Shown: positions 764 to 29,254 of the stretch, piece after piece | How the letters are laid out: each line of letters opens with the position of its first letter | How positions within the stretch are numbered: the stretch's first letter is position 1 | Assembly: GCA_021613535.1 (NCBI GenBank) | Contig: CP075495.1 | Location: forward strand, 7,812,001 to 7,876,000 | Reading direction: 5' to 3' | DNA from: Adineta vaga | Lineage: Eukaryota; Animalia; Rotifera | Length of the DNA: 64,000 nt | The notes under the pieces: generated by a model | The model's database searches: none | Told to the model about the DNA's origin: nothing | Seen by the model: the letters and a program-made list of their open reading frames with translations, nothing else | Program-made: the position numbers and the translations under genes

Positions 764-2247
764 ATGGCAAAGGTAAAATAATTGAATTCTTCTTCATTCA
801 AACGAAGAGAAGAACTTTTTAGGAAAATGATGGTGTAAAACAAAATAAATCTAACGGTCACACAATGCCAAGAAATGAACAAAGACCAAAAGGTCGTTCA
901 TCATGTTGTTCAATATGTATCTATACATTTATTTTTGTTTCCGGTGTCATTGTTGGTAAGATAACTTTAATAATTACAACTGAAGATGAATATCTCGTTT
1001 CGTCTATTTAGCAACAATTTTACCTGATTTAGCTGGTCATCAATTTAAACAACCTTATGGAAAAGAATACGGTATGGTTTGAATTAGAAATTTTCATTTA
1101 AAGAGATTCTTTTGTATTTGAAGGTGTAATGCTTGAACAAGCATTTAAAGATTTACCAAAACACATGACTACTTTAGCAGAAACAGCAGTCGTCGTTGGT
1201 CGTGATCTAATGAACCGATTTTGGAAAATGAAAGCAGAAATTGATCGTCGTGTCGCTGACATACAAGCCAAAGAAGGTGATAAATCATCATCGTCATCGA
1301 CAACAACAAAACGTACTGCAACAACAAGTAATAATTAACATATACAAATAACTAAAAACAAAGTAATTTCTCGTATTTTTAGCGAAAGGTACAACCCAAC
1401 GTTCAACAACAACCAAAACAACAACAGCTGGTTTGTATTTTTGTTTTATTTTTCCACTTGAAATTACGAGCAAAAAAATTCGTTTAGCTACTACAAAACA
1501 AACAACTACTACTCAACGCACAACACAAACAAGTTTGTAGATGCATTTTTATACCTAAAATTCATTTGTTTCTTTTAGCAACGACAACACGTCGACCAAC
1601 TACAACCACTACCAGCACCACCACTACTACCCCACGTCCAACTACTACCACTACCACTACCCCACGTCCTACTACTACTACCACCACCACTACTACCCAA
1701 CGTCCAACTACCACCACTACCACTACCCCACGTCCTACTACTACCACCACCACCACCACTACTACCCAACGTCCAACTACCACAACCACCACTCAACGTT
1801 CAACTACTGCTACAGAGACAACTACAGCAGCAACTACTCAACCAACTACTACTACCACCTTCACTGAAGCAACCACGCGTGCTGCAACTACTCAACCAAC
1901 GACAACAACAACAACCACTCCTACAATTCAAACAACAACTATTCCTCCTGCTACCACTCAAACAGCAACGACTCCTCCTACTACCACCATCACCACTACC
2001 ACCCAAGCTACGACACGTTTTACTACTTCTGCCACAGGTAGCAACATATCTTTTGCTTTTTTTTATTACTATTCTAATATTAATGATTTCATCATTTATA
2101 GCGCATCAAGATCATGTTCACACAGTTCGTGCACATGATACAACAAAAGCAACACCAGTCGTAACGACTGAAACAATAGTTCTCGAACCTGCAACAGTTA
2201 AGTCTCAAGAAAAAGCAAAAGATACAGTACCAACCAATGAACTCTAA
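764..2247 (+). CDS. Type II membrane protein with Thr-rich mucin-like ectodomain (multi-exon)
   Basis: Spliced frame MAK|ENDG...SSCCSICIYTFIFVSGVIV|ATILP (one TM segment after a basic N-terminus), then a helical segment and several Thr-rich exons. Stop at 2247. Introns have canonical GT-AG ends. Confidence 0.7.
1580..2000 (+). repeat. Coding low-complexity tandem repeat (P/Q-R-P-T7-10)
   Basis: Repeated cccacgtccaactactaccaccac units encode PRPTTTTTTT. Confidence 0.85.
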
Positions 2248-9558: not shown

Positions 9559-12500
9559 ATGTCTACACCTTCGAATAATTCGAATGAATATCGTGAACAA
9601 GGAAATCAAGCATTTAAACAAGGCAAATTTCAAGAAGCTATTGATCGATATACTGATGCATTAAAAATTCTTAAAAATCTTCAATTAACTGAGGAAAATA
9701 GAAATAATTTAACGAAATGTTATAGTAATCGTGCGCAATGTTATATTAATCTTGAACAATATGATGATGCTATTGAAGATGCAACACGAGGTAGATCAAT
9801 GAAGTTATTAATAGGGATATCTATCGATTATGTTTGTTGTTATATTTAGCTTTGGAGTATCGCCTACTGATCAGAAATCATTGTATCGTCGAGCAAATGC
9901 TTTTGAACGTTTAGGAAAATTAAAAGAAGCAATATCAGATGCTCAAAGATTAATGTCTGTGACATCAAAAGGAGCAACTACGGATGATCAAACATATGCT
10001 CTTCTTCGAAAATTACGTGAAAGTGCACAGAGCAAAGTATGTGAATAGAATCTTTTTCTATATTTTATTTTATTTTATTTTATTTTTTTGTTATTGAAAG
10101 ATTTCACAACAAACACAAGTAAACAATCAAGTTCAACAGATGTTCGAAACAATCACATCGAAACCAGATCAACTAGAAACTGTATGAGTGAAATTTAATA
10201 TGATTGTGATTCGAGTGATAGCAGAAACTATTTATGCATGTTTCGCATGAGTTGTGTTTTTTTTTCTCATTTCTATGCACGGATTATTGCAGTCGATAGG
10301 TAAATGATAAACAAATCTTGATTTTAAAGATGAAACTCGCATCGATTACTTTCTTTCAGGCATTAAATAATCTATTGGTCGTTTCACGTGAGGCTGCAGG
10401 TGCTGAAGCAATTATTACCTATGATACAGATCTACGTAATTTAACTGAATTTATTCAACGTAGTGATCGAATGAGTGTGCTTGGCACTTTAAGAATATTG
10501 GGTGCATTGGCTAAAAATTCGTATAGACGGGTAAGTTTCTCAATTAATCTATAATTGAAAATGAATGTAATCAGTTAAACATATTGATTCTATTGTTTAG
10601 GCTGAAATAATTTATACTAAACTTGGTTTAAAACTAATCGGTCGTTGTTTGGCAATGAATGATACGGAAATTCCAACGAATGCTGCTATATTAATTCATA
10701 ATATGCTCATGTCAATATGTGATTTAGAAAATCGTCGTAAAGTTCGTAAACCTATGAATGTACCATACAATTTCGGTAATGAATGATTATTTCATGCAAA
10801 ATCTATCTATACATGAAAGTTTATTTTTTCAATTTAGATCAATTTGTTATTGAATTTATTAATGAAGTATTTCGTATGCTTTTGGATTTGATTGATGATA
10901 AAGCATGTTCAGGTATTGGTCGTGATTGTTGTCTTGATCTTATTGTGAAATTCGTTGATCGAGCAAATGGTTGTAATTGGACAAGTAAATTTATAATATC
11001 AGGTAATAATTAGAATAGACATTTCTTTGGATTTTGCTTCTATGTAACATCTTTTTATGTAGGTTTACCGAAAGTATTGCGAGTAGCAGCAACAGTACCG
11101 GAACTACCTGAAACGGAGAAAAAACATTATCCATTAACAGAACAAACAAAAATGCATATCTCAATGGCATTGAGTATTGTTTATCATGATTTAGTTTCGG
11201 ATAAGGAACGTGAAGATTTTAATAATGAATGTATTGAATTTGTTAAGTAAGTTCAATCGCTATCAACGTTGAATATCTCGCACAACTATGACATTTTTTA
11301 CAAAATCTATTTCAGGGCATTACATGAACGAGATGATATGCAATCACGTGTACGAACAATTTCAGTTCTCTCTATTCTATTGCAAGGTCCATTTGATACG
11401 GGTAATGCCATCTTAGGTAGTCAAAATTTAGTTGATCTAATGATACAAATGGCTGGCTCGGGTGATCCATTACAAGAAGTAACGATTCATTCATACCTTT
11501 GTTTATAAAATACTTTTTGAATTTTGTAGCGTATTGCAGTTGAAGCAATTGTTTTATCCGCTTCGAAAAAAGATAAAGCTGCTGGTATTCTATCATTAGG
11601 TTCTGAAATTCTCAAAAATCTATATCAATCAGCTAATGAACAGATTAAAGTGATTGCATTAGTGGTAAGTCGATTTTTCGAATGTAGAATTTAATTTCAA
11701 AATCTTCTTTCTAGGGTTTATCAAAAATTGCCTCTAGTAAAGGTACTGATTCAGATGCAAATCTTGTTACAGAAGGTTCATGTCAAACACTAGCTCTCGC
11801 ATGTTGCAAGTAAAGAATTTAAAAAGAATTTTTTACGATATATCTACGAAATATTTTGCAGATTCTTAACTACAAGTCCAAATTTTGATATTCGTCGTTG
11901 GGCAGCTGATGGTCTTGCTTATTTAACATTGGATGCTGATGTGAAAGAAGATTTAGTCGATAATCTTCCTGCAATTAGATCTCTCTTTAGTCTATGTCAA
12001 TGCGATGATGCACATGTTCTATATTCGATTACAACCATATTTGTAAATTTAACCAATACATATGATATACGAAAGAAGGATAAGCAAATGGAAGAATTAG
12101 CGACATATGCAAAACAACACATCCCTAAAGAACATTCAAAAGTAAAAAGGAAAAGTTATTTGATCAATCGTCATTTTAATTTTACGCTTTTTTCTCCAGG
12201 ATGCAACGGAATTTTTTGAAGAACGTCGTCGAAAATTAGTTGATGCTGGAATCATACCTGTTATAGTACAATTATGTAAACATAAGAGTGAAAATTGTCG
12301 AGAACAAATAGCAAGGTAGAAAAAATAGAAGAACATGTTTCTATAGATTAACATTCTATTTTACAGAATCTTTCTTGGACTTTGTGAAAATGAAAAATAT
12401 CGTGGACCGATCGTTGCCGCTGGAGGAGCTAAAGTATGTTTTAGACATCAAGATTCTCTTGAATAGAAGGAACATATATGCATTTTTTTCAAGGCTCTAC

Positions 12501-13582
12501 TTCCACTAGCACTAGATGGTACACCAGTTGGTAAAACAAAAGCAGCACAAGCATTGGCGAAAATTGCTATTACAACAAATCCAGAAAATGCTTTTCCTGG
12601 TCAACGTGTATGTTGCAAAATATTTATCGATTCGTCTTCAATTTGATTTCTTCTTAGACATTGGAACTCGTTCGACCAATTCTCAAACTTCTTAAAATGG
12701 AAAATACTGCATTAGAAAGTTTCGAAGCACTCATGGCTTTAACTAATCTTGCAGGTGTCGGAGAACATGTTCGAAAACGTATTTTAAAGGAAGATGGATT
12801 TCCCAATATTGAACAATATATGTATGAAGATCATCGAATGCTTCGACGAGCAGCAACGGAATGTATGTGTAATTTAGTTATACAAGAAGAAGTAAGTGTG
12901 TAAATTGTTCGATTTCATAAATCTATCGTTTTAATTTAGGTAGTGAAACTTTTCACTGGTGAAAATGATCGTATTAAATTATTGATTTTATTATGTGGCG
13001 AAGAAGATGATGTATTAGTAAAAGCAGCCTTAGGAACATTAGCTACTCTGTCATCATTACAAGTTGATCTTGATGATTTCAAAGATGTTGAATTATCCGA
13101 TGAAGATCGAAAGAAATTAAATGAATATATTGAAGATAATCGAATAATATGTGAAAAACTTGTGAATGTAAGTTTGAAGTGAAGAGAATGAAATCATCTT
13201 CTTTTCTTTTATTTAGGTTGTATCGTTTACGGAAATCTTCAAACAACTCTGTGCTTCAACTGATTTCGAGATACAATTTCGAACTTTATATATTCTTCGT
13301 AATTTAGTTAAAGCAAATAAAGACATTGCTACACGTATTGTAGCATCAGAGTTGATGGATGTTCTATTTGCGCTCAAGGAAACAAAAGATGTACGATTAA
13401 CGAATGATAAAGTAAGTTAGTCAGTCGCAAGAGAAACTATACTATCTAAGATCACTTTGTTTCACTTTTAGAATCGAAAAGTGGTTTCAACTATTCTTCA
13501 ACTATGTCTGAAATATGGTCTTATTCAACCAAATAAAGATCTTGCAATTGCAGAAGAAGATGAAGGTGTCGATGCAGAATAA
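9559..13582 (+). CDS. UNC45: UNC-45 myosin chaperone (TPR + UCS)
   Basis: N-terminal TPRs ([32 protein letters not shown]), plus [34 protein letters not shown] and [11 protein letters not shown]...[11 protein letters not shown]. Many short introns. Confidence 0.95.
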
Positions 13583-16377: not shown

Positions 16378-17665
16378 CTTTATTTTATTATTGTCTATTC
16401 AACAAGTAATTCAAATGATTGTATTATAAACAAATATTATAAGTACACCTAACATCGAAATAAATTACATTCACGAATCGCCATATTTCATCAAATGCAC
16501 TTAGCCCTGTTTGTGAAGAAGGAATGAATAGATGACGTTAATTGTTAACATAATGTAACATATATGTGTCACAAATACGGTTTAATTTCATTTCATGATC
16601 TTCTATGAGTGTATAACGATTTTATCATTTATATTTACTGATAATTGAATTAGTTTGAAGAATATTTGCTCACATATGAATATATTTGATTCTAAGATAT
16701 TATAATAAGAAAATAAAAATATCAATGCTATGAATACTTGATTATTTGACATGTATTAGAGAGTAAATAACTGATAATGGTTGATTAATTGAAGCAAAGC
16801 CCAGCAAAAATTATTACAAGATGTTTTTTTACTTTTATTTTGATTTAAGTGCATAAATATGAGAAAATTAGATATTTTAATTTTTAATACCTTGAACAGT
16901 TTTTTTGATGGATCTCTATTTAATTATTCTTCTAAAGTATGTTTCTGTCTTTCCAAAACAGTTTTGAACGAGCTCGAAGCACTATCAATACATTGCTGAC
17001 TGAAAGAATGCAAGAACTAATACAAAATGTGAATGAATTCGTTCATAAGATACTTTAAGTAAATTTGTTAAACGGTAAAACTTTTTTCAATTTATTATTT
17101 TAGTTTCGCAAAAAAGTCTTTATATTAGGAAGAGAAATTGTGTAGGAAAGATCATGTGATAATAAACTTCTCTCACTAAGTATTAAAATATTTTGAATGT
17201 GTGTTAAATAGAGACAAGCAAATATTTGTTTCTTTTTCCATTGCTCAATCATACTGCATTGCATGTTTTTTTTTCTTAAACTTGAAAGTGTATCAACCAT
17301 TATTCTTATGTAAGGTAGTGCGGGGTAAAGAAAGCTAAGAATATTTGATCGTTAAATAAACAACTGTACGACATAAAATAAAAATAATATCAACAATATT
17401 GTGATTTGTCTTTGGTCTCAACTAACAAATAGTGACAACGACAATCAGTTTCTCATGAATTCTAACGGATACTAATAGCATTTAGCAGAAGACAGTGTGA
17501 ATATAAATATAATCTTTGTTGATTATTAACAAATAAAGAATATTTAATAAAGTAAACAATTCATTTCATATATTTTATTTGATTAAAAATTAAAAAATTA
17601 CAAGAAAAAAGTAAAGTTCAAATTGAGAAGACTATTATAGAAAATCAAACTAAAAAACGGCTTGG

Positions 17666-17840
17666 TTATAGTGAAAAACTACCGAATAATATGATACTGA
17701 AAAGTTCCTTTGGAGCCATTGCCTTGATGGTCTCGATCGATTTCTGAAAAGAAGAAGAGAAAGAAAAAATACAATGGTAACAACTATCTTCAGAATAAGA
17801 TTTTGTCTAACTTTCAAATAGCGACTAAAAATACACTTAC
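17666..17840 (-). other. Putative terminal intron (17744-17840) and last exon of a minus-strand transcript crossing the array
   Basis: Strong donor GTAAGT at 17840 and strong acceptor tctcttcttcttttcAG at 17744. The exon reads KSIETIKAMAPKELFSIILFGSFSL* in phase 0. A minus-strand AATAAA lies at 17574-17579. Confidence 0.45.
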
Positions 17841-18399
17841 TTTATTACTGACACATTCAACTATTCAGCTAACTCAATAAAGATATTGATGACGTTGAAT
17901 ATTGGCTCATAAGTAAAGAAAATTGAACAGGTAATGTTCAAGTACTGTTCAAATGCTCCACCACGACGCAATAAAATATTTTTTACTAAAATACGACGTG
18001 AGGACACACAGCGTATGAATGAAAAAGTTACATAACTGTTCATATATTTCGTTATATTCAAAGCGCAAATAAATAGTTTGAAGAACTCGTTGGCATGAAA
18101 TTGTTAAATACAATAAACAAATGGTTATCTCAAATATTTTGCTTTGTTTTATGATAATATGACTAATTGATGGAGTCATACGCAGAATAAACGATATATG
18201 AATTACTCAAAACACAATCATTTTCTACTATAAGGTAATGGTAAACGACAGAAGAATATCGCAGTAAATGATACAATATGAAATCATCAGTGAACAAGCA
18301 ACAAAAATATTGCATTCAAATATAGTATTATAGTTAGCATGAAATAGTATTAAAAATTGATAAATAAAAACAAACGGTAGATGAATAGATTACAGAAGA

Positions 18400-20170
18400 A
18401 TAGTATTCAAATATTGCACTGTAATCAATATTGGATTATTATTTAACTTCAGAGTGCCGAAACACCTGATAGACAAATATATCATACCAGAACAGTAATC
18501 AAATATTGCACTGCAGACTACATTACACAAGTATCCGTGCCGGGAGTTTTGAAACAAATGATAAACAAATAACTCACAGTAGAATGATATTCAAATATTG
18601 CACTACAGACAACATTAGACAGCTATGCAAGTTAGCCGTTTTAAAACAAACAGTAGACAAATAACTTATAAGAAAACAGTATTCAAGTATTGTACTGTAG
18701 ACAACATTATACAACTATCCCTATTAGCCGTTCTAAAACAAATAGTAGACAAATATCTCATATAAGAACAGCGTTCATATATTGCACTACAAACAACATT
18801 AGACAACTGTCCGTGTCGCAACTTTTGAAGCAAATAATAAACAAATAACTCACATCAGAACATTATTCAAATGTTGCACTACAAACTACATTAGGCAACC
18901 ATCTGTGTCAGCAGTTTTGAAACAAATAATAAGCCAATAACTTACAGCAGAGCACTATTCAAATATTACATTTCAGACAACATGAGATAACTATCCGTGT
19001 CGGGAGTTTTGAAACAAATAAGAAGCCACTAACTCACAACAGAACACTATTCAAATATTGCACAGCAGATATCATTAGACAACTATTCGTGTAAACCGTT
19101 TCAAAACAAACAGTAGACAAATAACTCACATCAGAACACTATTCAAATATTACACTGCAGACAAAATCAGATAATTAGTCAACTGAGTATTTTCAAAACA
19201 GTTGGTAGACGAGGAACTCATACCAGAACAGTATTCAGATGTTGCATTACAGATAAGATCAGATAAATATCCGTATTATGAACTTTGAAACAAGTGATAG
19301 ACAAATAAATTCTATTATAGCAGTATTCAAATATTGCACTATCGACAGCATCAGATAATTATTCAAGTTCACAGTGTCAAAATAAACAGTAAATAAATAA
19401 ATCGCAGGAGAACAGCATTCATATACTATGCATTACAAACAACATCGGAAAGTTACTCCATATTACAGTTTCAAAACAAATGCTATACAAATAACTCACA
19501 TTAGAACATTATTCAGATATTTCACTGCAGGCAACATCAAACAACTATTCAAGCTAGCCGTTTCAAAACAAATGATAGACAAATGACTCATAACAAAACC
19601 GTATTCAAATATTGTGCTGTAGACAACATCAGATAATCATTTAATTTCACAATTTCAAAACAACCAATAAACAAATAAATCGCAGCAGAACCGCATTCAT
19701 ATACTATGCATTAGAAACCACATCGGAAAGTTAGTCGACATTACGGTTTCAAAACAAAGGATAGACAAATAATCCATATGAAAACAGCATTCATATATTG
19801 CACTGCAGAGAAAGTGAAATAATTAGTCGACTTCACATTTTCAAAACAGTTAATAGACGAGTAGCTCATATCAGAACAGTATTCAGATATCGCACCAGAA
19901 GCAACATCAAATAATTATTCGATATAGCATTTGAAAAATAAACAATACACAAATAACTTCTATTATGGTAGTATTTAAATATTGCATTGTGGACAGCATT
20001 AGATATTTATTCGATTTTATAGTATAAAAACAGGTGGTAGACGACAACTCTCCATAAAAATAGTATTCATATATTTCACTACAAATAAAAATAGAATTGT
20101 TAGTATTAGGGTTATTCTGGAAACACACAATACAAGTTGAGCTGACAAGAAGATTGTATTCATATTTGCT
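18400..20170. repeat. Homogenised 92-bp sub-array (about 20 copies)
   Basis: Consensus approximately tattcaaatattgcactgcagacaacattagacaactatccgtgtcggcagttttgaaacaaatagtagacaaataactcacatcagaacag. Confidence 0.92.
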
Positions 20171-21634
20171 GTTGAAATCAACTGCAGAATTGTCTCACAA
20201 ACTAGATTCTTGAAAAACAAACGTCGATAGTATATTATTAACAATTATTATATTCATTACTTTTTCTCAGCTGTAGCCCACATTCAGTTTCGAGAGAGAC
20301 ATGGACAATCATATGACATATGAAGAATTCATACTTGAGTTACGTTCAAATATGTTAATTAAAACAATCTCAACTTTTCATTATGAGTCAAACAAATGTA
20401 AACAAGCTTTGAATGAATAAAACGATTTAGAATTACAATCATATACTCTACGTGATGCAGAAGAACATATGAAATAGCTGCACAAATGACATGTATAAGA
20501 TGGTGGAACAATCTGAACAACTAATCAATTTAAATATTGTGCGCATTTCGAAGTATCATTTTGTTTCTATGCATTAACTAAGCATATAAATAATGAATGA
20601 ATAACTCTTATTAATAATGTCTTTGAATATTACAGTATCTTCACAATAAAATATTGAACCGATCAGAGAATTGAAAAACAAATGATAAGAGGATGATGCC
20701 TACTAGCCTCTCGTTCGATTATTGTATTGGAATCGACATTCGATGTAGATATCAAACATGATAATTTAAAAAGAAATGAGAAAGAAATGATTTTCACCAG
20801 AAGTATATTCAAATAATGTGCTACAGTCTGTGATCGAATACTTTATACTCTACATAACTAGAAAGCAAACTAGAAAGAAATGAGTTACACCATGACTCTA
20901 TTCGTATAAGATATGAAAATACTGCTTCTGTTTGCCATGCAGATCAAACACTTTATGAATACGTGACACATGAATAGAACTCCTGCCAGGATTGTTTTCA
21001 AATATTACATCGAATTCTATATCAGATATATCTTGCACATCAAATGATTAAAAACCAAATGTTCAAGGAACATGACAGACAATTATTTCATTCAGCAATT
21101 TTCCTCAGTTATAGTTGACAAAGAAGTTTAACGAAGATGTCGATAATCAGATAGTAACTATATATGTTACATCTTTGATACGCCCAGATATGTTATTCGA
21201 CACAATGGTGCATCTCTATTCTCTATCGTACAAATACAATGAACTGTCAAATGAATGAAACGATTGAGTATTGTATTCACATACGTTACTTTATTTGAAA
21301 GAACTTACAGACTTTTTGCAACGAATGATGAATATAAAAATACTGAACTGCACGAACAAATGTTGGATACATATATTTTATTCACTTGTGAATGAGACCT
21401 CGGATCTCTGAATGGATATGAAAAGGAAACGATGAACGAATAAATCATAGAGAAATCTTCGGATATATTATGAAAATCGACTTTAAATGTACGTCACATC
21501 GGATGATTAAAGTCAGTGTAACACAGGAATAACTCAAAACACAACTTTGTTCATGTATTGAAACGAAATCACTATGAAATAGCTTCGAGATTCGATAGTT
21601 CGAAGATATATAACGAGGAAACAACTCATAGAAA

Positions 21635-22405
21635 GATCTTATTTAAATATAATAGGAAAATCATTGTTGCAGATATCTCACACATCAGATCACTCAGAAT
21701 AACATTACAAAGAAACTACTCATACGAGTATCTTATTCAAATATGATAGGCAAATCGATATTGTAGATATCTCACAGATCAGACCACTCAGAACAACATC
21801 AGAAAGAAACAACTTTTAGAAAGATCTTGTTTAAATATGATAGTCAAGTCGATGTTACAGATATCTCACACATCAGATCACTCTGAACAACATCAGAAAG
21901 AAACAACTTTTAGAAAGATCTTATTTAAATATGATAGTGAAGTCGATGTTGCAGATGTTTCAGACATCAGATCACTCAGAATAACATTAGAAGGAAACTA
22001 CTCGTACGATGATCTTATTCAAATATGATAGGCAAATCGATGTTACAGATATCTCGCACGTCAGACCATTCTGAACAACATCAGAAAGAAACTAATTATA
22101 TTAGGATCTTGTTTGCATAAGATAGTCAAATCGATGTTGTAGATGTCTCACACATCAGACCACTCTGAACAACATCAGAAAGAAACTACTTATATTAGGA
22201 TCTTGTTTGAATATGATAGTCAAGTCGATGTTGCAGATATCTCACACATCAGATCACTCAGAATAACATTACAAAGAAACTACTCATATGAGAATCTTAT
22301 TCAAATATGATAGTCAAATCGATATTGTAGATATCTCACAGATCAGATCACTCAGAACAACATCAGAAAGAAACAATTTATATTAGGATCTTATTCAAAT
22401 ATTAC
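21635..22405. repeat. Homogenised 94-bp sub-array (about 8 copies) with 282-bp higher-order structure
   Basis: Unit tcttattcaaatatgatagtcaaatcgatgttgcagatatctcacacatcagatcactcagaacaacatcagaaagaaac. The variant gaataacatta...aaactactc recurs in the units at 21643, 21925 and 22207. Confidence 0.92.
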
Positions 22406-24185
22406 ACATAACTGTGCATTACGAATTTAGTAAATTAGTTTTTTCGAACAGAAGTGTTTGACGATTAATTCTAACAACGATTATATTTAACAACCTTGTG
22501 TAGTTTATGATTATAAAATAGGTTGTATCTCTACGTATAAAGAATGACAGTATACGATCAATTAAGACGATAACTGCATTCAAATATTTACTGCAATTCA
22601 TACATTAGATCTCAGCCATAGAAGATATTGAAAAATCGAAAGAAAAATGAATATGTTACACCAAGTTTGTATTCAAATACTTTCTTCAACTCGAAGTGAT
22701 AGCATTTTGAAAATGAATTATTTAATGGCTATCATTCAGAATACGATCTACTAAGTATCTGTTTGAATATTTTCAGGAATCTCAAATTCATATTCGGATG
22801 CAACTACATGATCTAACGGAACACAAAAGTCAGATAGCATGGACAATAGTTATAATCAAATATGATGAATATTCTAATAAAAATTCCAGGTATAGAATAT
22901 TCGAGCAGAGATCTGCCATTTAATGAACTGTGAAAACACTAGTTCTGTCTAAATTTAGTGTAAAAATCTGTAAAAGTTCTTTTTATGTTTGCTACGAATA
23001 ATATCTACAAAGATTGCGAATATTCGTTTGATAATACTATTCAGTAATACTGAGTTGTTTAAAGAAATGATTCTGGATGATATAATCAATGGACAACTCG
23101 TCACAGTCGAATATATCATACGGTTATGAAGTTGTTCAAAAAACTTAGTAGCTTGAAAAAACAACAATCCAAATTATGATATCAATATCCTTTACATAAA
23201 CACATAATAGTTCAAAACAATATATTATTCAGGAAACTGATTCACCTGAAGCTAAGGAAAGAGAATTTTATGTTTGGTAGATACATCGAAAACGAATGCT
23301 TTGAAATAGAATTTGATCAACATATTGTATGTAAATTAACGGAGAACTGTCAACTATCCCAAATGAATGTCTCTTGAATAGTATATGAACTATTCAAACA
23401 CAAAATCTGTTCAAATATTGATATTTTATTTAAACATGAGCAAATTAACAGGCATTATATATAAAATTGTATGTTGTACAAATAGGTTCATTTCCAAAAT
23501 ATATTCATATACTTGATTTTAGAGCAAGCAACAATAATTGCTCGTATGAATATCATAAAATGATCGATGATGAATAGAATATACCAACGTTCTGATCTGT
23601 TATTAGTATGGCACTCTATCATGAAAACTACACCACTAGTATCTCTCGCAAAACATAGTGTTCTTGAACGGATAACAGTATAATTCTATTCGAGTATTCG
23701 GGTTTTGAACAAGTAAGATTAACCACAAATATATGTAATATGTATAATGCAATAATCGGTCATGAATAAGGTATAAGAAAGCTTTGATCGGTTACTTCTG
23801 AGACAATCTGGTGCAGAAACACTAGTTTCGATATCTTTGCTAAGTGCATTACCTGTGAATGGTTAGCATTACAGTTTTGTTCAAATATGTGTGAGAAAAC
23901 GAAATTTTATAACAACAATTATTATGTTGTCAGTAACTATCTAGACAATGTACGACGGGCAAAACATTGTTCAATATATACGTCGAAATGAAAGTAGTGT
24001 TTTATTTCTAATATCGAATTAGTACACCTGAGACAAATGACTAATTCACACAAATTTTCAATCCTAATATCGTATAATTGAAAGCAAACACCGATTGAAC
24101 TTGTTATCTGGTATGGAAACGAATAGTGTATGAACTATTTCAAACGAATTACTATTCGAATATTTATGCAATGATTTTTTACATT

Positions 24186-24401
24186 TCATAGTGCAAAATT
24201 GACCACTGATATCTGACTGAAAAACGAACAGATTTTGTCACGCTTCTGGAAGTTTCCTTGAAGTAGTGATTTCAAACGAGCAATACGACGTTGGAAGCTA
24301 CTGGTCTCTTCAGAATCTTCATCCGAGTGGAAGCCATTGCAAGTTGTTGCAAGAACCATCATGCATAAAGTAATGCCAAGTATTGTAATATTGTTGACCA
24401 T
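24186..24401 (-). CDS. Secreted prepropeptide (signal peptide, acidic pro-region, dibasic KR site, short mature peptide), 71 aa
   Basis: MVNNITILGITLCMMVLATTCNG-FHSDEDSEETSSFQRRIARLKSLLQGNFQ-KR-DKICSFFSQISVVNFAL*. An upstream acceptor tttttcattttAG lies at 24422 and candidate donors at about 24845 and 24995 indicate 5'UTR exon(s). Confidence 0.65.
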   Translation of the reverse strand: MVNNITILGITLCMMVLATTCNGFHSDEDSEETSSFQRRIARLKSLLQGNFQKRDKICSFFSQISVVNFAL

Positions 24402-25506
24402 CTTGTGCTTTTCAATAATATCTAAAATGAAAAACAAGCAGAGATCAATAATAAGAAAACGAATAGAAAATATGTATTGTATGTTGTTTGAAAACAGCTA
24501 GTTAAATACACAAGTTAAACCGAGAGAGATAAAATATAAATCCAGGACACAGTTGAATTAATAGGCCAATGAAAGAAATACATCGTCTTTGTCGTCAATA
24601 CAAAACATAGCTTCCATTGTATGGGGTATAAACTATACTCATCCATGTGCTACCTATACCTACACAGAAATACTTTCTACCATTATATCTCATACATCTC
24701 TTATTTTCTCTCTCACATATTTTGTTGACGTGTTAAGCTTCGTCAAGGTTTTGTTTTGCTCTTTACTCAACGATTACTAGTTCGAAGTATAAATAACTCA
24801 AAAAATAATTATAAAGGATAGATAAACAGATTCTTCATATAATACCTTTCACAATGTATGTACACAGAGAATGCAAAATTAAACGCAAAAAATATGCTTG
24901 TCAAATTTTTTGTTGCAACAAAGAGCCGATATACGTTTTGATGATGAAAAACATGAATCAATCAAACGTTAACAAGCAACGTGGTGTTTATTTACCTGTC
25001 CGTATACAGAAGAAAAACAGAAAAAAATGAATATTTTTTCCTTATATACATAATCGACGCAAAACTAAAATAAAAAATCTATAGAAAGAATATGTTGTTC
25101 AGATGATACATAACTGAAACAATAATTTTCATTCACAATATACTCTTCAACAGACTTTTTTTTAGGCACGCCATCACGAAGTTTGTTCTCTTTATTCAAA
25201 AACGAAAGCGTAAATAAAGTTGTTCATTTCACATTCCTTGATTTTAAAAAAATTATTTATGTTCTGTAGTGGTAGAAAAGTCATTAGTTTATAAAGAAAG
25301 AAGAATTTAACAAAAAACTCTACTAATTTATTTCGTTTCACTTTCGTTACCCATTTTGTTGAAATTATTTCAAAACTATTATGCAAGCAATGATCTCTAA
25401 CGAGCAAAAAGAATAAAATGTCATTAGATTCTTTGTCAACAAAGTGCTCTGCTCTATCAAACGAAACGCAAGAAAACGAAAGAACGAATTAAAAAAGCCT
25501 GTTTAT

Positions 25507-25898
25507 CAGAGCTCGGACGAGTATTTCTGATATACTTGAACTAAACAGGCTTTATTTATATTAGAGTTTCGTTTTGAGGACGATCTATTAGATTCATTAG
25601 ATGCAGCTTTTTAACTTCTACAAAATGACTAGGGTCACATATTCGCATTGTCTTTGCAATCGATGATAATTTGTAAATAATGAAGAAAATACTTGTACTT
25701 GTCAAGTACAAGTATATTTCATGGTTTTTCGATTGTTTTTACTTAGTTAAATTAGAAGTGGACAATGTGATCCCAGCCATTTTGTATAAGTTAAAAAGCG
25801 GCATCGAATGAATCTAATGGATTGTCCTCAAAACCAAATTATAATAGAAATAAAGCCTGTTTAGTTCAAGTACATCAGAAATACTCGTCCGAGCTCTG
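25507..25898. mobile_element. Non-autonomous hAT-like MITE / foldback element (392 bp)
   Basis: Long imperfect terminal inverted repeats begin CAGAGCTCGGACGAGTATTTCTGAT and end ATCAGAAATACTCGTCCGAGCTCTG. Exact 8-bp TSD CTGTTTAT at 25499-25506 and 25899-25906. Central palindrome tacttgtacttg-t-caagtacaagta. Confidence 0.9.
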
Positions 25899-27367
25899 CT
25901 GTTTATTCAACAATTTTCGGTATTTCAATATTTACAATAATTATAAAAGCATATTTATTCGCTTATCCATCTATATACATTCGAAGAAGCTCAATAATAA
26001 ATCTGTCAATATTCGACTATTTTTAAAACTATATTAATTTTGAATATATCATTGATTAATTCGCAAATAATCAGATAAAAATAAATTCAAACATATATAT
26101 CGCTTCAAGTTACATGTTATGTTGCTTCTAAAACAGTATTACAAATATCAATAACGATATTGGTGATGAACTTTCATCGACAAGTATGATGATGTTTTTT
26201 CTCTGGATTAGATTTTATTTCGACAGATTTTTCCTTATTTTTGTTCTTTAGAATCAGGCTAAAATAAAACCAATATTTTGTTTGACTTTATTATGGTGAT
26301 TTGTGTCAAGTATGATCAATGAGTGTAACAACAAAAATTAATAATGTCTCAGAAAGTTTTACACATCACTTTAAATTTTACGATTTGACTAAAATTATCG
26401 GCAAATAATAATCATATTAAGTTTATATTTAAAATTGAATCGATCAAAATTAACGGAGATGCTCAATAGTTCCTAATTCGATCAACTTCCAATCATTGTC
26501 ATATTTTCTTTTTTGCACGATGCATAGGTATTATTAACGATGATAGTAGGAAATCATTTATTGATCTTCATCATGGTGCTGCTAGTGATCTTTTCAATAA
26601 TGTACATAAATGCTTTTGACGATCAGCTTTGTTTTTTTAACATCGATGGAATCATATCAAATATGTATTGATTATTCTATAATTGGACAACTGAAATATG
26701 AAAAACAAACATGTAAATATGTACATATATGATGTGCTGATTTCTCATGTCTACAAAACAGTATTTTAAGGAGAAACTATCTGAATTTATTTTATTGGAA
26801 TTTATTGAGACTTACCAGTTTTATCTATATTTCTGGGCATCCTCATCGTTGTTTCTACCTCTACCTTCACCAAGTTATCGCTCTCATCGACTTTTATTGT
26901 TCAATCAGCTAGACTAATCGAATGGATCTATTTGCTGTTAAGTTTTCAAAACGTTAATGAAACTAACTATGCTTTATTATCAGAAGATTTATTGGAAACA
27001 CAATGATATACTCGTCATATATTGCTAATTGCTGTTGATATCATTTCATGAAGTAAGACATATAAAAAATCAAATAATATCTTGACTGTTTTCTATTACC
27101 GTTCTTATCTATCATTCTCTATCAATTACAGTCTTCTGGCATGAAATTGAATTTATATTTAAATAGGTGCTACTTATACTGGCAACATTAGGTGACAAGC
27201 CTCGGGTGACACTCCTATTTATCATCTAACGTCTTCATATACTCATGAGAGAAATCTGAACGCACAGTGGAAATCTATTGTGTTAAGTTTTCTTGTTTTT
27301 TGGCAAATCTGTTGATTTTTCAATCTAATTCATCATCTTTTTCAAAGACAAATTTTTATTATCAATC

Positions 27368-29254
27368 TTATTTTCTTGACATTCTCATTATATTATTACG
27401 AATAATAGTCAAAGATCGATGATTTGACGGAAGAGTTTTTTCTAAAATTTCTAATGATTCTTGATAACATGAACGTGCAGAAGATTTATCACCAATTGAA
27501 TCATAAATATCACCAATATTATTATACAATGTTCCTATTGATGGATGACCTGGTGGAAGTTTATCAAGAAAAATATTCAATGCATTTTGAGAATTTTTTA
27601 ATGCGTCTGTATATTGATATTGATCCATAAGAACAGATGCAATGTTATTATAATCAGTAGCAATTTCTAATGGATCAGGTTGAAGAGCATGAAGATCAAT
27701 TTCAAGTGCTCGTTGAAAATTTTGTAATGCTCCATTCAAATCACGTTGTTCGAGAAGGACAGCTCCAATATTTGAGTATGTTCCTGAAAGTGCTGGATCA
27801 GTCGATGATAAATATTTTGATTTCAATTCTAATGATTTTTTATAATATATCAATGCTTCAGAAAAATTTCCTTGTTGTTTTTTAACATATCCAAGTTGAT
27901 GATAAAGAGGAGCAAGTTCTTGAAGTTTCTTTTTATCTGTATTTTTCAATAATGTACTATAAATTTCTTCGGCTTTGTCGAAATTATCCATTTTTGTCAT
28001 TAAATGACCTAAACAATGCCAATCAGTGCCACCAGTGATTTCCGTTCTCATACGTTCGGTTATTTGTACTAAATGTTCGTCATTATCGCTAGTTAATTCC
28101 AACTGAACTTTCCATAAACGTTCTTCCAATTGTTGACATTGTCGAATTCGAAATATTGTATGCATAGAAAAGAGAATTTCTTTTTCACTATCAGCAAAAT
28201 AACTAAGATTATCCAATGGTGCATATGGTGTTGTAGAAATCGATGGATTAATATGCATTTCAAATAAAATCGCTGTTAAATCAGGATTATTCAGTGCACA
28301 TCGAGCAAAACCTAAGGATACATCACGTGTAACACTTGTTGATAGAAAATTATTGAATGATAAGAGACCACCTTGATTCGATTTCATTTTTTCAAAATCT
28401 TCATTTAACATTCCTTGACCACGATAGACTATTAATGATATTGATTTATCAAGTTCAGAATATAATTGTTGAAGTTGTTGATGAAGATCTCGAACAAAGA
28501 AACCCATTTTAATAATTATTTCAATATCTTGTGTTCGTAATGCTTTATTTAACATTGTATAAGTAAAACATTCACGTGTATACCACCAAATTGGTGATGG
28601 ACGATCATAATCAAGTTCGAATTCATTGATAGTTTTCAATTCATATTTATTTCCAGAATATTGTTCACGACAAAATGCAACTAAATCTTGTTTAGCTCGA
28701 TCATCGAATGGTAATCGAAGTAAGATATCTTTCAACAATTGAGAATACATAAATGATTGATCAAGTTCATTTGATTTTGTTGAAACAATACTAACTGCTG
28801 TTAAATCTTCATCACGCCGACGAATATCTTTTTGAAGTTTTTTACAAATAGGTTCAATTTCATTGAAGATTCCTTGAATTTTCTTATATTCTTTAATCCA
28901 TGTCGTATGTTTAGATGGATTATTACAAAAAATATAGACAGAATCAAGTTGAGTCATATCATTAATCATCGGTAAAATATGTTGACCGATTGAACCAGAA
29001 ACAATCATGAAGATCTTTTCAGTTTTTATTTGATTTAAATAATTCAGACAAGTTTCGATCTCAGTAAATGTTTTAATTGCATTCGCAATACGCTGCAGTT
29101 GATGAATCGAGTTTTGTGTATGTTTATTGGATTCACTGATATTTGTATCTAACCAAATAATAATAAAATTTTCTACAATACGTAAACGGGATACTGCTGG
29201 TTTAACACGCGCTTGATTCACTGTAGAAGTAATGTTTGAACAGGTACTACCCAT
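27368..29254 (-). CDS. ADP-ribosyltransferase (R-S-E type) + TPR-repeat protein with receiver-like N-terminal domain; intronless CDS
   Basis: WWYT...LNKALR, VYRGQ (R), NNFLSTS (S) and SEKEILF (ExE), followed by kinesin-light-chain-like TPRs (YHQLG, YSNIG, YNNIA, YNNIG). N-terminus MGSTCS. Confidence 0.88.
   Translation of the reverse strand: MGSTCSNITSTVNQARVKPAVSRLRIVENFIIIWLDTNISESNKHTQNSIHQLQRIANAIKTFTEIETCLNYLNQIKTEKIFMIVSGSIGQHILPMINDMTQLDSVYIFCNNPSKHTTWIKEYKKIQGIFNEIEPICKKLQKDIRRRDEDLTAVSIVSTKSNELDQSFMYSQLLKDILLRLPFDDRAKQDLVAFCREQYSGNKYELKTINEFELDYDRPSPIWWYTRECFTYTMLNKALRTQDIEIIIKMGFFVRDLHQQLQQLYSELDKSISLIVYRGQGMLNEDFEKMKSNQGGLLSFNNFLSTSVTRDVSLGFARCALNNPDLTAILFEMHINPSISTTPYAPLDNLSYFADSEKEILFSMHTIFRIRQCQQLEERLWKVQLELTSDNDEHLVQITERMRTEITGGTDWHCLGHLMTKMDNFDKAEEIYSTLLKNTDKKKLQELAPLYHQLGYVKKQQGNFSEALIYYKKSLELKSKYLSSTDPALSGTYSNIGAVLLEQRDLNGALQNFQRALEIDLHALQPDPLEIATDYNNIASVLMDQYQYTDALKNSQNALNIFLDKLPPGHPSIGTLYNNIGDIYDSIGDKSSARSCYQESLEILEKTLPSNHRSLTIIRNNIMRMSRK

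What the first reader, a model, noticed from the sequence alone, without database searches (positions are those of the whole stretch)
17570..24430. A ~69-unit, ~93-bp phased array fills the space between a secreted prepropeptide ORF and a spliced terminal exon
Seen: a TATTC(A/G)AATA-like anchor recurs about every 92.6 bp from 17857 to 24156. It keeps its phase even where the ~80 bp between anchors is barely alignable. The array begins about 30 bp after the stop of the minus-strand signal+pro+KR peptide ORF (24186-24401). It ends about 15 bp before a strong minus-strand donor (17840), which is followed by an intron, an exon and AATAAA. Inference: the array looks like the cargo of one Pol II transcript (leader ORF, unit array, terminal exon) rather than a free satellite. 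Units of 92 and 94 bp cannot be a simple coding repeat. Candidate functions are a precursor cut into many variable small RNAs, a cassette array spliced onto the secretion leader to diversify peptides, or a phased protein-binding scaffold. I know of no described system with this layout.
Basis: partly seen in the sequence, partly recalled or inferred. Interest (0 to 1): 0.8.

Follow-up and report, generated by a model that had tools for sequence, protein, structure and literature searches.

The report
Conserved 93-bp rotifer repeat array
The 6.3-kb array is real and non-coding, and it belongs to a previously unnoticed family of 93-bp repeats found at many places in this rotifer genome and in other rotifers; every unit keeps the same 40-base motif, so the motif probably binds something, but what it binds is unknown.

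Summary
Window 17863-24166 (minus strand) holds 69 head-to-tail units of 89-98 bp. The anchor stays in phase even where the rest of the unit has decayed to random similarity.

The array is not a one-off. The same unit occurs at 10 or more other loci of this genome (Adineta vaga) and as arrays of 100-145 units in other rotifer-like metagenome contigs. All share a roughly 40-nt module, AAAATATTTGAATAGAAyyyTnnT(n6)TATTCAyTTG, and a 93-bp period.

No reading frame is protected from stop codons. No unit-wise splice sites are conserved. There is no hairpin, no covariation and no Rfam match. Peptide cassettes and small-RNA precursors are therefore not supported.

- At five other loci the array starts 0-60 nt after the stop of a same-strand ORF. 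Two of those ORFs (three with the window's own) have a signal peptide, an acidic stretch and a dibasic site.
- At three other loci, one in another species, the array ends just before a canonical intron and an AATAAA.

Best reading (about 0.45): the arrays are the non-coding 3' body of Pol II transcripts, and the module is a reiterated landing site. The nearest known analogue is Drosophila hsr-omega. A DNA-level binding box (about 0.3) remains a serious rival. No RNA data could be reached.

The parts
17863..24166 (-). Array of 69 tandem units (89-98 bp, period about 92.7). Each unit is a conserved module of about 40 nt plus a free-evolving spacer of about 53 nt.
24153..24162 (-). First anchor (TATTCGAATA), at the start of unit 1. 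The module consensus on the minus strand is AAAATATTTGAATAGAAyyyTnnT(n6)TATTCAyTTG.
18410..19985 (-). Recently homogenised 92-bp sub-family, about 17 units, with 184- and 278-bp higher-order periods.
21618..22405 (-). Recently homogenised 94-bp sub-family, 9 units, with a 282-bp higher-order period.
24186..24401 (-). ORF of 71 aa: signal-peptide-like N-terminus, acidic stretch, RR and KR sites. Its stop lies 24 nt before the first anchor. It has no detectable homologue.
17744..17840 (-). Putative 97-nt intron just after the last unit: AAA|GTAAGT donor, 24-nt pyrimidine tract, CAG acceptor.
   Evidence: the same arrangement occurs after arrays L144, L157 and L167
17570..17743 (-). Putative terminal exon with AATAAA at 17579-17574. 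A weak module-like match at 17576 lies about 8 bp off the array's 93-bp phase.

Best explanation
The feature is one large member of a bdelloid-wide family of non-coding 93-bp tandem repeats.

Each unit has two parts. The first is a module of about 40 nt that is kept by selection: anchor TATTTGAATAG, two near-invariant T's separated by two free bases, then TATTCAyTT. The second is a spacer of about 53 nt whose sequence is free; its length looks conserved.

Arrays sit on the sense strand directly behind the stop codon of an upstream ORF. Here that ORF is 71 aa and looks like a secreted prepropeptide. Several arrays end just before a canonical intron, a short last exon and AATAAA.

Most likely the array is the long non-coding 3' body of a Pol II transcript. 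The module would be a reiterated landing site for a sequence-specific factor, either an RNA-binding protein or a small RNA. The transcript would then act as a multivalent scaffold or sponge, or the array would act as a cis-regulatory 3' UTR.

Shown: the array, the family, module conservation, absence of coding or structural constraint, and the recurrent layout. Inferred: transcription through the array, and binding.
For: Family:
- The module pattern, with up to 3 mismatches, hits 260 places in the genome against 35 for the reversed control.
- Phased arrays occur at C1:4.45 Mb (17 profile hits in 3 kb, lag-93 z 6.1), C1:11.50 Mb, C1:15.87 Mb, C2:8.21 Mb and C2:8.31 Mb.
- Other organisms: L144/L082, about 145 units, whose flanking VWA-RING protein is 71% identical to an A. 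vaga gene; the L051/L058/L059/L083 group, about 120 units; and L126, L131, L132 and L054.

Constraint:
- The same consensus appears in every array. T21 and T24 are conserved at about 90% or more in every array (invariant in the 71 exact-93-bp units of L144), with free bases between them.
- The anchor is retained where spacers are randomised.
- 93 bp is the modal unit length in L144, L058, L126, L131 and L054, although that length range is partly set by the search method.

Transcript context:
- The first unit lies 0-60 nt after a same-strand stop, with no AATAAA between, in the window, L165, L166, L159, L160 and L164.
- The tail of the L165 ORF is itself a unit (z 6.1).
- A donor lies 14-20 nt after the last anchor, followed by an intron and AATAAA, in the window, L144 and L157; L167 is similar, with its donor about 230 nt downstream.
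Against: - No RNA data could be reached. The leader ORF is not on record in the contig index and has no homologues among 5.8 billion proteins.
- AATAAA is not depleted on the sense strand of the arrays: 5 observed against 4.9 expected here.
- The three signal-peptide-like leader ORFs show no significant BLASTP similarity to one another.
- The anchor is a near-palindrome, and the conservation peaks are about 11 bp apart. This suits recognition of double-stranded DNA at least as well as RNA.
- One array (L157) is separated from the upstream gene by that gene's own AATAAA and a telomere-like junction.
- The orientation count rests on six loci. For three of them only forward-strand ORFs were searched.
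Confidence: 0.45

Rival explanations
1. DNA-level element: a satellite-like array whose 40-bp module is a box for a sequence-specific DNA-binding protein, for example a chromatin, insulator, pairing or replication factor. The 93-bp period (about 9 helical turns) would place all boxes on one face of the helix.
For: - The anchor is a near-palindrome, TATT(Y)(R)AATA.
- Conservation peaks at about positions 8-12, 21-24 and 33-36, roughly 11 bp apart, with fully free bases between T21 and T24.
- There is no RNA structure or covariation.
- AATAAA is not avoided on the sense strand.
- The period is the same across species while the spacers are free.
Against: - A symmetrical DNA site does not explain why arrays share the strand of the upstream ORF in 6 of 6 loci and abut stop codons.
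- It does not explain why arrays end at a donor, intron and poly(A) signal on that same strand.
- The arrays are not centromere-like: they are many and of very different sizes, not one per chromosome.
Confidence: 0.3
2. A selfish or mobile repeat with no host function: a 93-bp unit or 3' cassette that spreads between gene ends and expands by slippage or unequal exchange. The module would be conserved because the spreading machinery needs it, or would be maintained by short-tract conversion between units.
For: - The family is multi-locus, ranging from single or few units to 69 or more.
- Arrays lie behind unrelated genes: RING, NHL, a coiled-coil protein and small ORFs.
- A telomere-like junction scar lies beside one array.
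- The window's array is flanked by a dispersed repeat (16467-17378) and a foldback element (25506-25903).
Against: - No shared termini, target duplications or coding capacity were found. The head and tail flanks of different loci share no sequence.
- Old units keep the anchor in place after their spacers have randomised. A dead mobile copy would not do this.
- The same module is kept across distant taxa.
Confidence: 0.15
3. A precursor of many small RNAs (snoRNA, miRNA or phased small RNAs), one per unit.
For: - The units are of uniform size and strand.
- A few sub-threshold C/D-box matches appear in metagenome arrays.
Against: - The Rfam matches are all far below the gathering score and lie on mixed strands. 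There are none in the window.
- Single units fold no better than shuffles.
- There is no covariation between the two complementary motifs.
- There are no conserved C/D boxes.
Confidence: 0.05
4. An array of coding cassettes: alternative or serial exons, or a decayed multi-copy peptide precursor, that diversifies the peptide behind the secretion leader.
For: - A prepropeptide-like ORF lies directly upstream at three loci.
- The consensus of L144 and L126 is open in one frame between anchors.
- The L165 ORF reads into a unit.
Against: - Every module carries stops in all three frames.
- Stop-creating substitutions are as frequent as other substitutions of the same type: ratio 0.98 in L144 and 1.38 in L126+L131. 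The L058 consensus has 9 stops in that frame.
- AG at the putative acceptor is present in 49 of 71 L144 units and in few window units. GT at the putative donor is present in 38 of 71.
- Units of 92 and 94 bp break frame.
- The L165 ORF uses a different unit frame from the one the window's KR codons occupy; the L166 register was read by eye only.
Confidence: 0.03

Closest known systems
Drosophila hsr-omega (93D) lncRNA gene
   Same: Both have a short, poorly conserved ORF, an intron, and 5-15 kb of tandem repeats. In both, the repeat sequence diverges fast while a short motif (nonamer ATAGGTAGG in hsr-omega) is kept by purifying selection. That nonamer has binding affinity for hnRNPs and is proposed as their landing site (10.1101/695486).
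   Different: - hsr-omega repeats are unique to one locus per genome and have units of about 220-280 bp that differ between species.
- Here the family is multi-locus, the 93-bp period is itself conserved, the module is about 40 nt, and the intron lies after the array.
- No heat-shock elements were found upstream.
- Transcription is not shown here.
Satellite DNAs with a conserved protein-binding box (for example alpha-satellite with the CENP-B box; from my own knowledge)
   Same: Head-to-tail non-coding units, locally homogenised blocks, higher-order periods, and a short box conserved within variable monomers.
   Different: - These arrays are short (0.3-13 kb), numerous and embedded between genes.
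- They are strand-locked to an upstream ORF and bounded by splice and poly(A) signals.
- There is no sign of one array per chromosome.
Repeat-bearing regulatory RNAs: NORAD (Pumilio sites), Xist A-repeat, CDR1as (miR-7 sites), Xenopus Xlsirts (79-81-nt repeats) (from my own knowledge)
   Same: A reiterated short conserved motif separated by unconstrained spacers, all on one strand of a transcript, which sequesters or recruits a factor.
   Different: - No binding factor or transcript is known here.
- The module matches no known element that I could name.
- The unit length is strictly kept.
Dscam-type clusters of mutually exclusive exons
   Different: The units lack conserved acceptor and donor sites and lack an open frame kept by selection. 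It is not a member.

Membership tests
Tandem-repeat (satellite-type) DNA family | Head-to-tail units with a common consensus, non-coding | tested here: met
   69 units in register; no long ORF on either strand; no frame protected from stops
Tandem-repeat (satellite-type) DNA family | The same unit present at several loci or in several species | tested here: met
   260 module hits against 35 for the control in the genome; arrays at L156, L159, L160, L165 and L166; arrays in L144, L058, L126 and L131
Tandem-repeat (satellite-type) DNA family | Heterochromatic or centromeric location and chromatin state | not testable with these tools
   No chromatin or cytological data. The window's array lies between ordinary genes: Rpc34 and an ART-TPR gene.
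hsr-omega-type repeat-bearing lncRNA | Short ORF plus intron plus a long tandem-repeat tract on one strand | tested here: met
   By sequence only: the window, with the ORF part repeated at L165 and L166 and the intron part at L144 and L157
hsr-omega-type repeat-bearing lncRNA | A short motif conserved in otherwise divergent repeats | tested here: met
hsr-omega-type repeat-bearing lncRNA | Repeats unique to one locus; stress-inducible promoter (heat-shock element) | tested here: not met
   The family is multi-locus. No heat-shock element within 200-1060 nt upstream of the four leader ORFs.
hsr-omega-type repeat-bearing lncRNA | The array is transcribed and nuclear-retained, and binds hnRNPs | not testable with these tools
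   No RNA or protein data could be reached
Alternative-exon cassette cluster (Dscam-like) | Every unit carries a functional acceptor and donor | tested here: not met
   G15 of GAATAG has a mean frequency of only about 0.4 across arrays. GT at the candidate donor is present in 38 of 71 L144 units and absent from the other consensuses.
Alternative-exon cassette cluster (Dscam-like) | An open reading frame kept in each cassette | tested here: not met
   Ratio of stop-creating to other changes is 0.98 to 1.38; the L058 consensus has 9 stops; only 39 of 71 L144 units are open in the best frame, and no frame is protected from stop-creating changes
Polycistronic small-RNA cluster (snoRNA or miRNA) | Each unit matches a known family or forms a stable, conserved structure | tested here: not met
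   Rfam: nothing in the window and only far sub-threshold hits elsewhere. No covariation.
Multi-copy peptide precursor | Units translated in one frame with dibasic sites between the copies | tested here: not met
   Stops in all three frames of the module consensus. The dibasic site occurs only in the leader ORF.
Spliced-leader RNA gene array | A conserved mini-exon followed by an invariant GT donor and an Sm site in each unit | tested here: not met
   GTGAGT is seen only in the window's 92-bp sub-family and in no other array consensus. The known rotifer leader sequence was not searched for.

The most novel reading that the evidence does not exclude
Bdelloid rotifers carry a lineage-wide class of Pol II transcripts whose 3' body is an array of 3 to more than 140 copies of a 40-nt landing pad at a fixed 93-nt pitch. 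The array is attached behind small secreted-peptide ORFs and other genes. It would act as a multivalent RNA scaffold or sponge, or as a 3' UTR switch acting on decay, localisation or translation, for a still unknown rotifer-specific factor.
Probability: 0.3. Interest if true: 0.8.

Novelty: new variant of a known kind. Interest (0 to 1): 0.6.

Why it matters
If the reading holds, this is a deeply conserved, abundant non-coding element of bdelloid rotifers that has escaped annotation. A crude extrapolation puts it at hundreds to a few thousand units per genome.

It has three useful properties:
- A sharply defined 40-nt motif that can be used directly as bait for the factor that reads it.
- A fixed pitch.
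- A fixed position relative to genes.

It would give an independent, non-insect example of the hsr-omega principle, in which repeats diverge while a landing motif is kept. It would also flag a set of small secreted-peptide genes whose expression may be controlled through their 3' arrays.

If the element acts at the DNA level instead, it is a candidate for a phased protein-DNA array in a genome whose chromosome biology is unusual. Either way, the profile of the module allows a genome-wide census.

Tried and rejected
Searches for copies of the array:
- BLAST of both homogenised blocks against the whole genome found only the array itself. A two-anchor exact pattern found no other array. I first read this as a unique locus, but the mismatch-tolerant module pattern overturned it.
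- Iterating an nhmmer profile drifted to the L144 family and lost the window. I replaced it with an equal-weight 44-nt matrix.
- A second module pattern had its spacing off by one base and was uninformative.

Paralogues and synteny:
- Weak paralogue hits of the leader on C6 and C1 carry no array.
- The A. vaga orthologue of the L144 flanking gene (C4:10.60 Mb) has no array within 20 kb.
- Flanks of the window, L144 and the L051 group share nothing but a Thr-rich low-complexity tract.
- Head and tail flanks of different A. vaga loci are not alignable.

Leader ORF:
- Exact look-up and two large protein searches returned only the window's own protein.
- A MAFFT alignment of the three leader ORFs looked like a family, but BLASTP finds no alignment at E of 100 or less. 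I therefore claim only a shared architecture.

Functional ideas tested:
- A hairpin between TGAATA and TATTCA: no covariation.
- Depletion of AATAAA as a sign of transcription: none.
- The anchor as the general poly(A)-site consensus: real 3' ends in the window do not resemble it.
- Heat-shock elements: none.

Literature and notes:
- Papers gave no description of this repeat.
- Earlier scan notes have nothing at this place.

Blocked steps:
- Looking up the L144 protein returned only the same contig.
Full report
**What the window is.** The window is G000:C2:7,812,001-7,876,000 of a 100.8-Mb, six-contig assembly at about 30% G+C. Earlier notes of this scan name the genome as Adineta vaga.

TATTYRAATA occurs 23 times in the window against 2.8 expected, and 17 of those lie in the array. 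All 14 exact TATTC[AG]AATA sites are inside it. Walking from anchor to anchor gives 69 units of 89-98 bp between 24166 and 17863 on the minus strand. That walk only looked within about 6 bp of the expected next anchor, so the length range is partly imposed by the method. Tandem Repeats Finder reports only two young blocks, a 92-bp family at 18460-19958 and a 94-bp family at 21618-22402. Lag 93 is nevertheless the strongest autocorrelation lag in the decayed parts (z 4.0 and 4.8) and is absent from the flanks.

In the 41 units outside the young blocks the spacers are 31.3% identical pairwise, against a random expectation of 29.5%. The first 40 nt are 44% identical. Relative entropy is 0.68 bits per column in the anchor and 0.10 in the spacer. 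The phased anchor therefore survives where everything else has been randomised.

**Anatomy of the unit.** On the minus strand the unit begins AAAATATTTGAATAGAA, followed by yyyTnnT and then TATTCAyTTG at about positions 31-40. T21 and T24 are nearly invariant, and the two bases between them are free. In one metagenome array these two T's carry 2.0 bits each, against 0.1 bits for the bases between them.

**The array is not unique.** BLAST and an exact two-anchor pattern found nothing else in the genome, because spacers diverge too fast for those methods. A module pattern allowing 3 mismatches hits 260 places against 35 for the reversed control. Most of the 3-kb loci it returned carry units phased at about 93 bp. 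L156 (C1:4.447-4.450 Mb) is array from end to end, with lag-93 z of 6.1. L165, L166, L159, L160, L161, L164, L157 and L167 hold about 3 to 15 or more units each. Only 4 of the 69 window units pass that pattern, so the true number of units in the genome is probably in the hundreds to low thousands. That figure is my extrapolation.

**The family exists in other organisms.** A three-anchor pattern scan of metagenome contigs, followed by nhmmer with a unit profile, found several arrays:
- L144/L082: two overlapping contigs of NCBI assembly GCA_016307145.1, about 145 units, at least 13 kb.
- L051/L058/L059/L083: one organism at 26% G+C, about 120 units.
- L126, L131, L132 and L054: short contigs that are entirely array.

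The L144 contig also encodes a VWA-RING protein that is 71% identical to an A. vaga gene on C4, so that organism is another bdelloid. All of these arrays share the module consensus, including the T..T signature. In L144, L058, L126, L131 and L054 the modal unit length is 93 bp. Outside the module the arrays are not alignable with one another.

**What the units are not.**
- Not coding. There is no long ORF on either strand, and the module consensus carries a stop in each frame. In L144 the one frame that is open in the consensus is open in only 39 of 71 units. Stop-creating substitutions are as common as other substitutions of the same type (ratios 0.98 and 1.38). The L058 consensus has nine stops in that frame.
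- Not exon-plus-intron cassettes. The G of GAATAG and any candidate GT are among the less conserved positions, and no donor is shared between arrays.
- Not structured RNAs. Single units fold no better than shuffles; that run stopped after 38 minus-strand units. The complementary TGAATA and TATTCA motifs show no covariation in 346 units. Rfam gives nothing in the window and only far sub-threshold, mixed-strand snoRNA matches elsewhere.

In the window a 71-aa ORF has a hydrophobic N-terminus, the stretch DEDSEE, and RR and KR sites. It stops 24 nt before the first anchor. Two other loci look the same:
- L165: a 76-aa ORF (MVATMKLAYCIALLMLVLTSC...KAKR...) runs straight into the array. Its last roughly 90 nt align to the unit consensus of another species with z of 6.1.
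- L166: an 86-aa ORF (MNTYTVIFAFLFLALATNHC...RRR...EKR...) stops 9 nt before the first unit.

These three ORFs are not demonstrably homologous. BLASTP finds nothing between them, and none has relatives in the protein collection. I therefore claim a shared architecture, not a gene family.

At L159 (a RING protein), L160 (a coiled-coil protein) and L164 the first unit lies about 40-60 nt after the end of a larger same-strand gene, with no AATAAA in between. That makes six of six loci on the same strand. For three of them I searched only forward-strand ORFs, so the count is suggestive rather than rigorous. L157 is an exception: its array is cut off from the upstream NHL gene by that gene's own AATAAA and by a head-to-head telomere-like junction.

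**The layout also recurs at the 3' side.** The window has AAA|GTAAGT 14-20 nt after the last anchor, then a 97-nt intron with a long pyrimidine tract, an exon of about 170 nt, and AATAAA. L144, from another species, has GTATGT 17 nt after its last anchor, a 68-nt intron and AATAAA. L157 has GTAAGC 20 nt after its last anchor, then an intron and AATAAA. L167 is similar, though its donor lies about 230 nt past the last unit. The terminal exons share no detectable sequence.

**Interpretation.** Three things are consistent: the strand relative to the upstream ORF, the position directly behind stop codons, and the closing intron with a poly(A) signal. Together they make it most likely that the arrays lie inside Pol II transcription units as a long non-coding 3' part. 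The module is sequence-constrained but neither coding nor structural, which points to a reiterated recognition site.

The closest described system is Drosophila hsr-omega. It has a short, poorly conserved ORF, an intron, and kilobases of fast-diverging tandem repeats that keep a nonamer, which has binding affinity for hnRNPs and is proposed as their landing site (10.1101/695486). The differences are substantial:
- This family is multi-locus.
- The pitch itself is conserved.
- The motif is about 40 nt.
- The intron follows the array.
- No heat-shock elements were found upstream.

**Why confidence is only about 0.45.** No RNA data could be reached. AATAAA is not avoided on the sense strand. The anchor is a near-palindrome with conservation peaks about 11 bp apart, and 93 bp is close to nine helical turns. 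All of this would fit a protein binding double-stranded DNA equally well (about 0.3). A selfish, spreading repeat (about 0.15) would explain the many loci and the unrelated upstream genes. It would not explain why anchors are kept in place in old units.

**Verdict.** It is a conserved, lineage-wide repeat family with a recurrent gene-linked layout. The exotic coding and small-RNA readings are not supported, and the function remains open.

Noticed in passing
L144:12504-14417 (+); A. vaga orthologues at G000:C4:10599691-10601628 and C4:300338-301927: A 638-aa protein whose first 17 residues after the initiator Met (ARTKQTARKSTGGKAPR) read like the N-terminal tail of histone H3. A VWA domain and a C-terminal C3HC4 RING finger follow. 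It is 71% and 63% identical to two A. vaga genes, so it is a conserved possible histone-tail mimic fused to an E3 ligase.
   Followed up: partly
window 25506-25903: An element of about 400 bp that matches itself on the opposite strand (79%), so it is a foldback or palindrome. Copies lie on C5 at 10.195 Mb (82%) and 16.687 Mb. It sits 1.1 kb upstream of the leader ORF.
   Followed up: no
window 16467-17378: A dispersed repeat with copies 67-73% identical on C2, C4, C5 and C6. It lies between the array's putative terminal exon and the next gene. It was not classified.
   Followed up: no
L157 about 1090-1190 (G000:C1:17.0355 Mb): Head-to-head telomere-like tracts (GTGTGGGTGTGAGTGAGGG ... CACTCACACCCACACCC) lie between an NHL-repeat gene and a small 93-bp array. 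This resembles the junction scars described in earlier notes on this genome.
   Followed up: partly
window 1566-2138 (+) and L051 1011-1573 / L058 about 12050-12700: Thr-rich, mucin-like low-complexity ORFs (ACC/ACT repeats). They produce the only nucleotide match between the window and the L051-group contigs. In L058 such a gene starts about 440 nt after the array ends.
   Followed up: no
window 27368-29254 (-): A single-exon 628-aa protein that joins an ADP-ribosyltransferase exoenzyme-type domain (PF03496) to TPR repeats. It is the nearest upstream gene on the array's strand.
   Followed up: no
L164 (reverse complement) about 1290-1400 (G000:C1:6.593 Mb): The last intron of the upstream gene (GTAAGT ... 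CTGAACAG) appears to end on an anchor-like GAACAG at the start of the array. In this one case an anchor may serve as a 3' splice site.
   Followed up: no
window 10034-10077 (+): A solitary match to the module (12.7 bits). Its first 15 nt are the last codons and stop of an ORF (…SKVCE*, AAA GTA TGT GAA TAG). It may be chance or a single unit.
   Followed up: no
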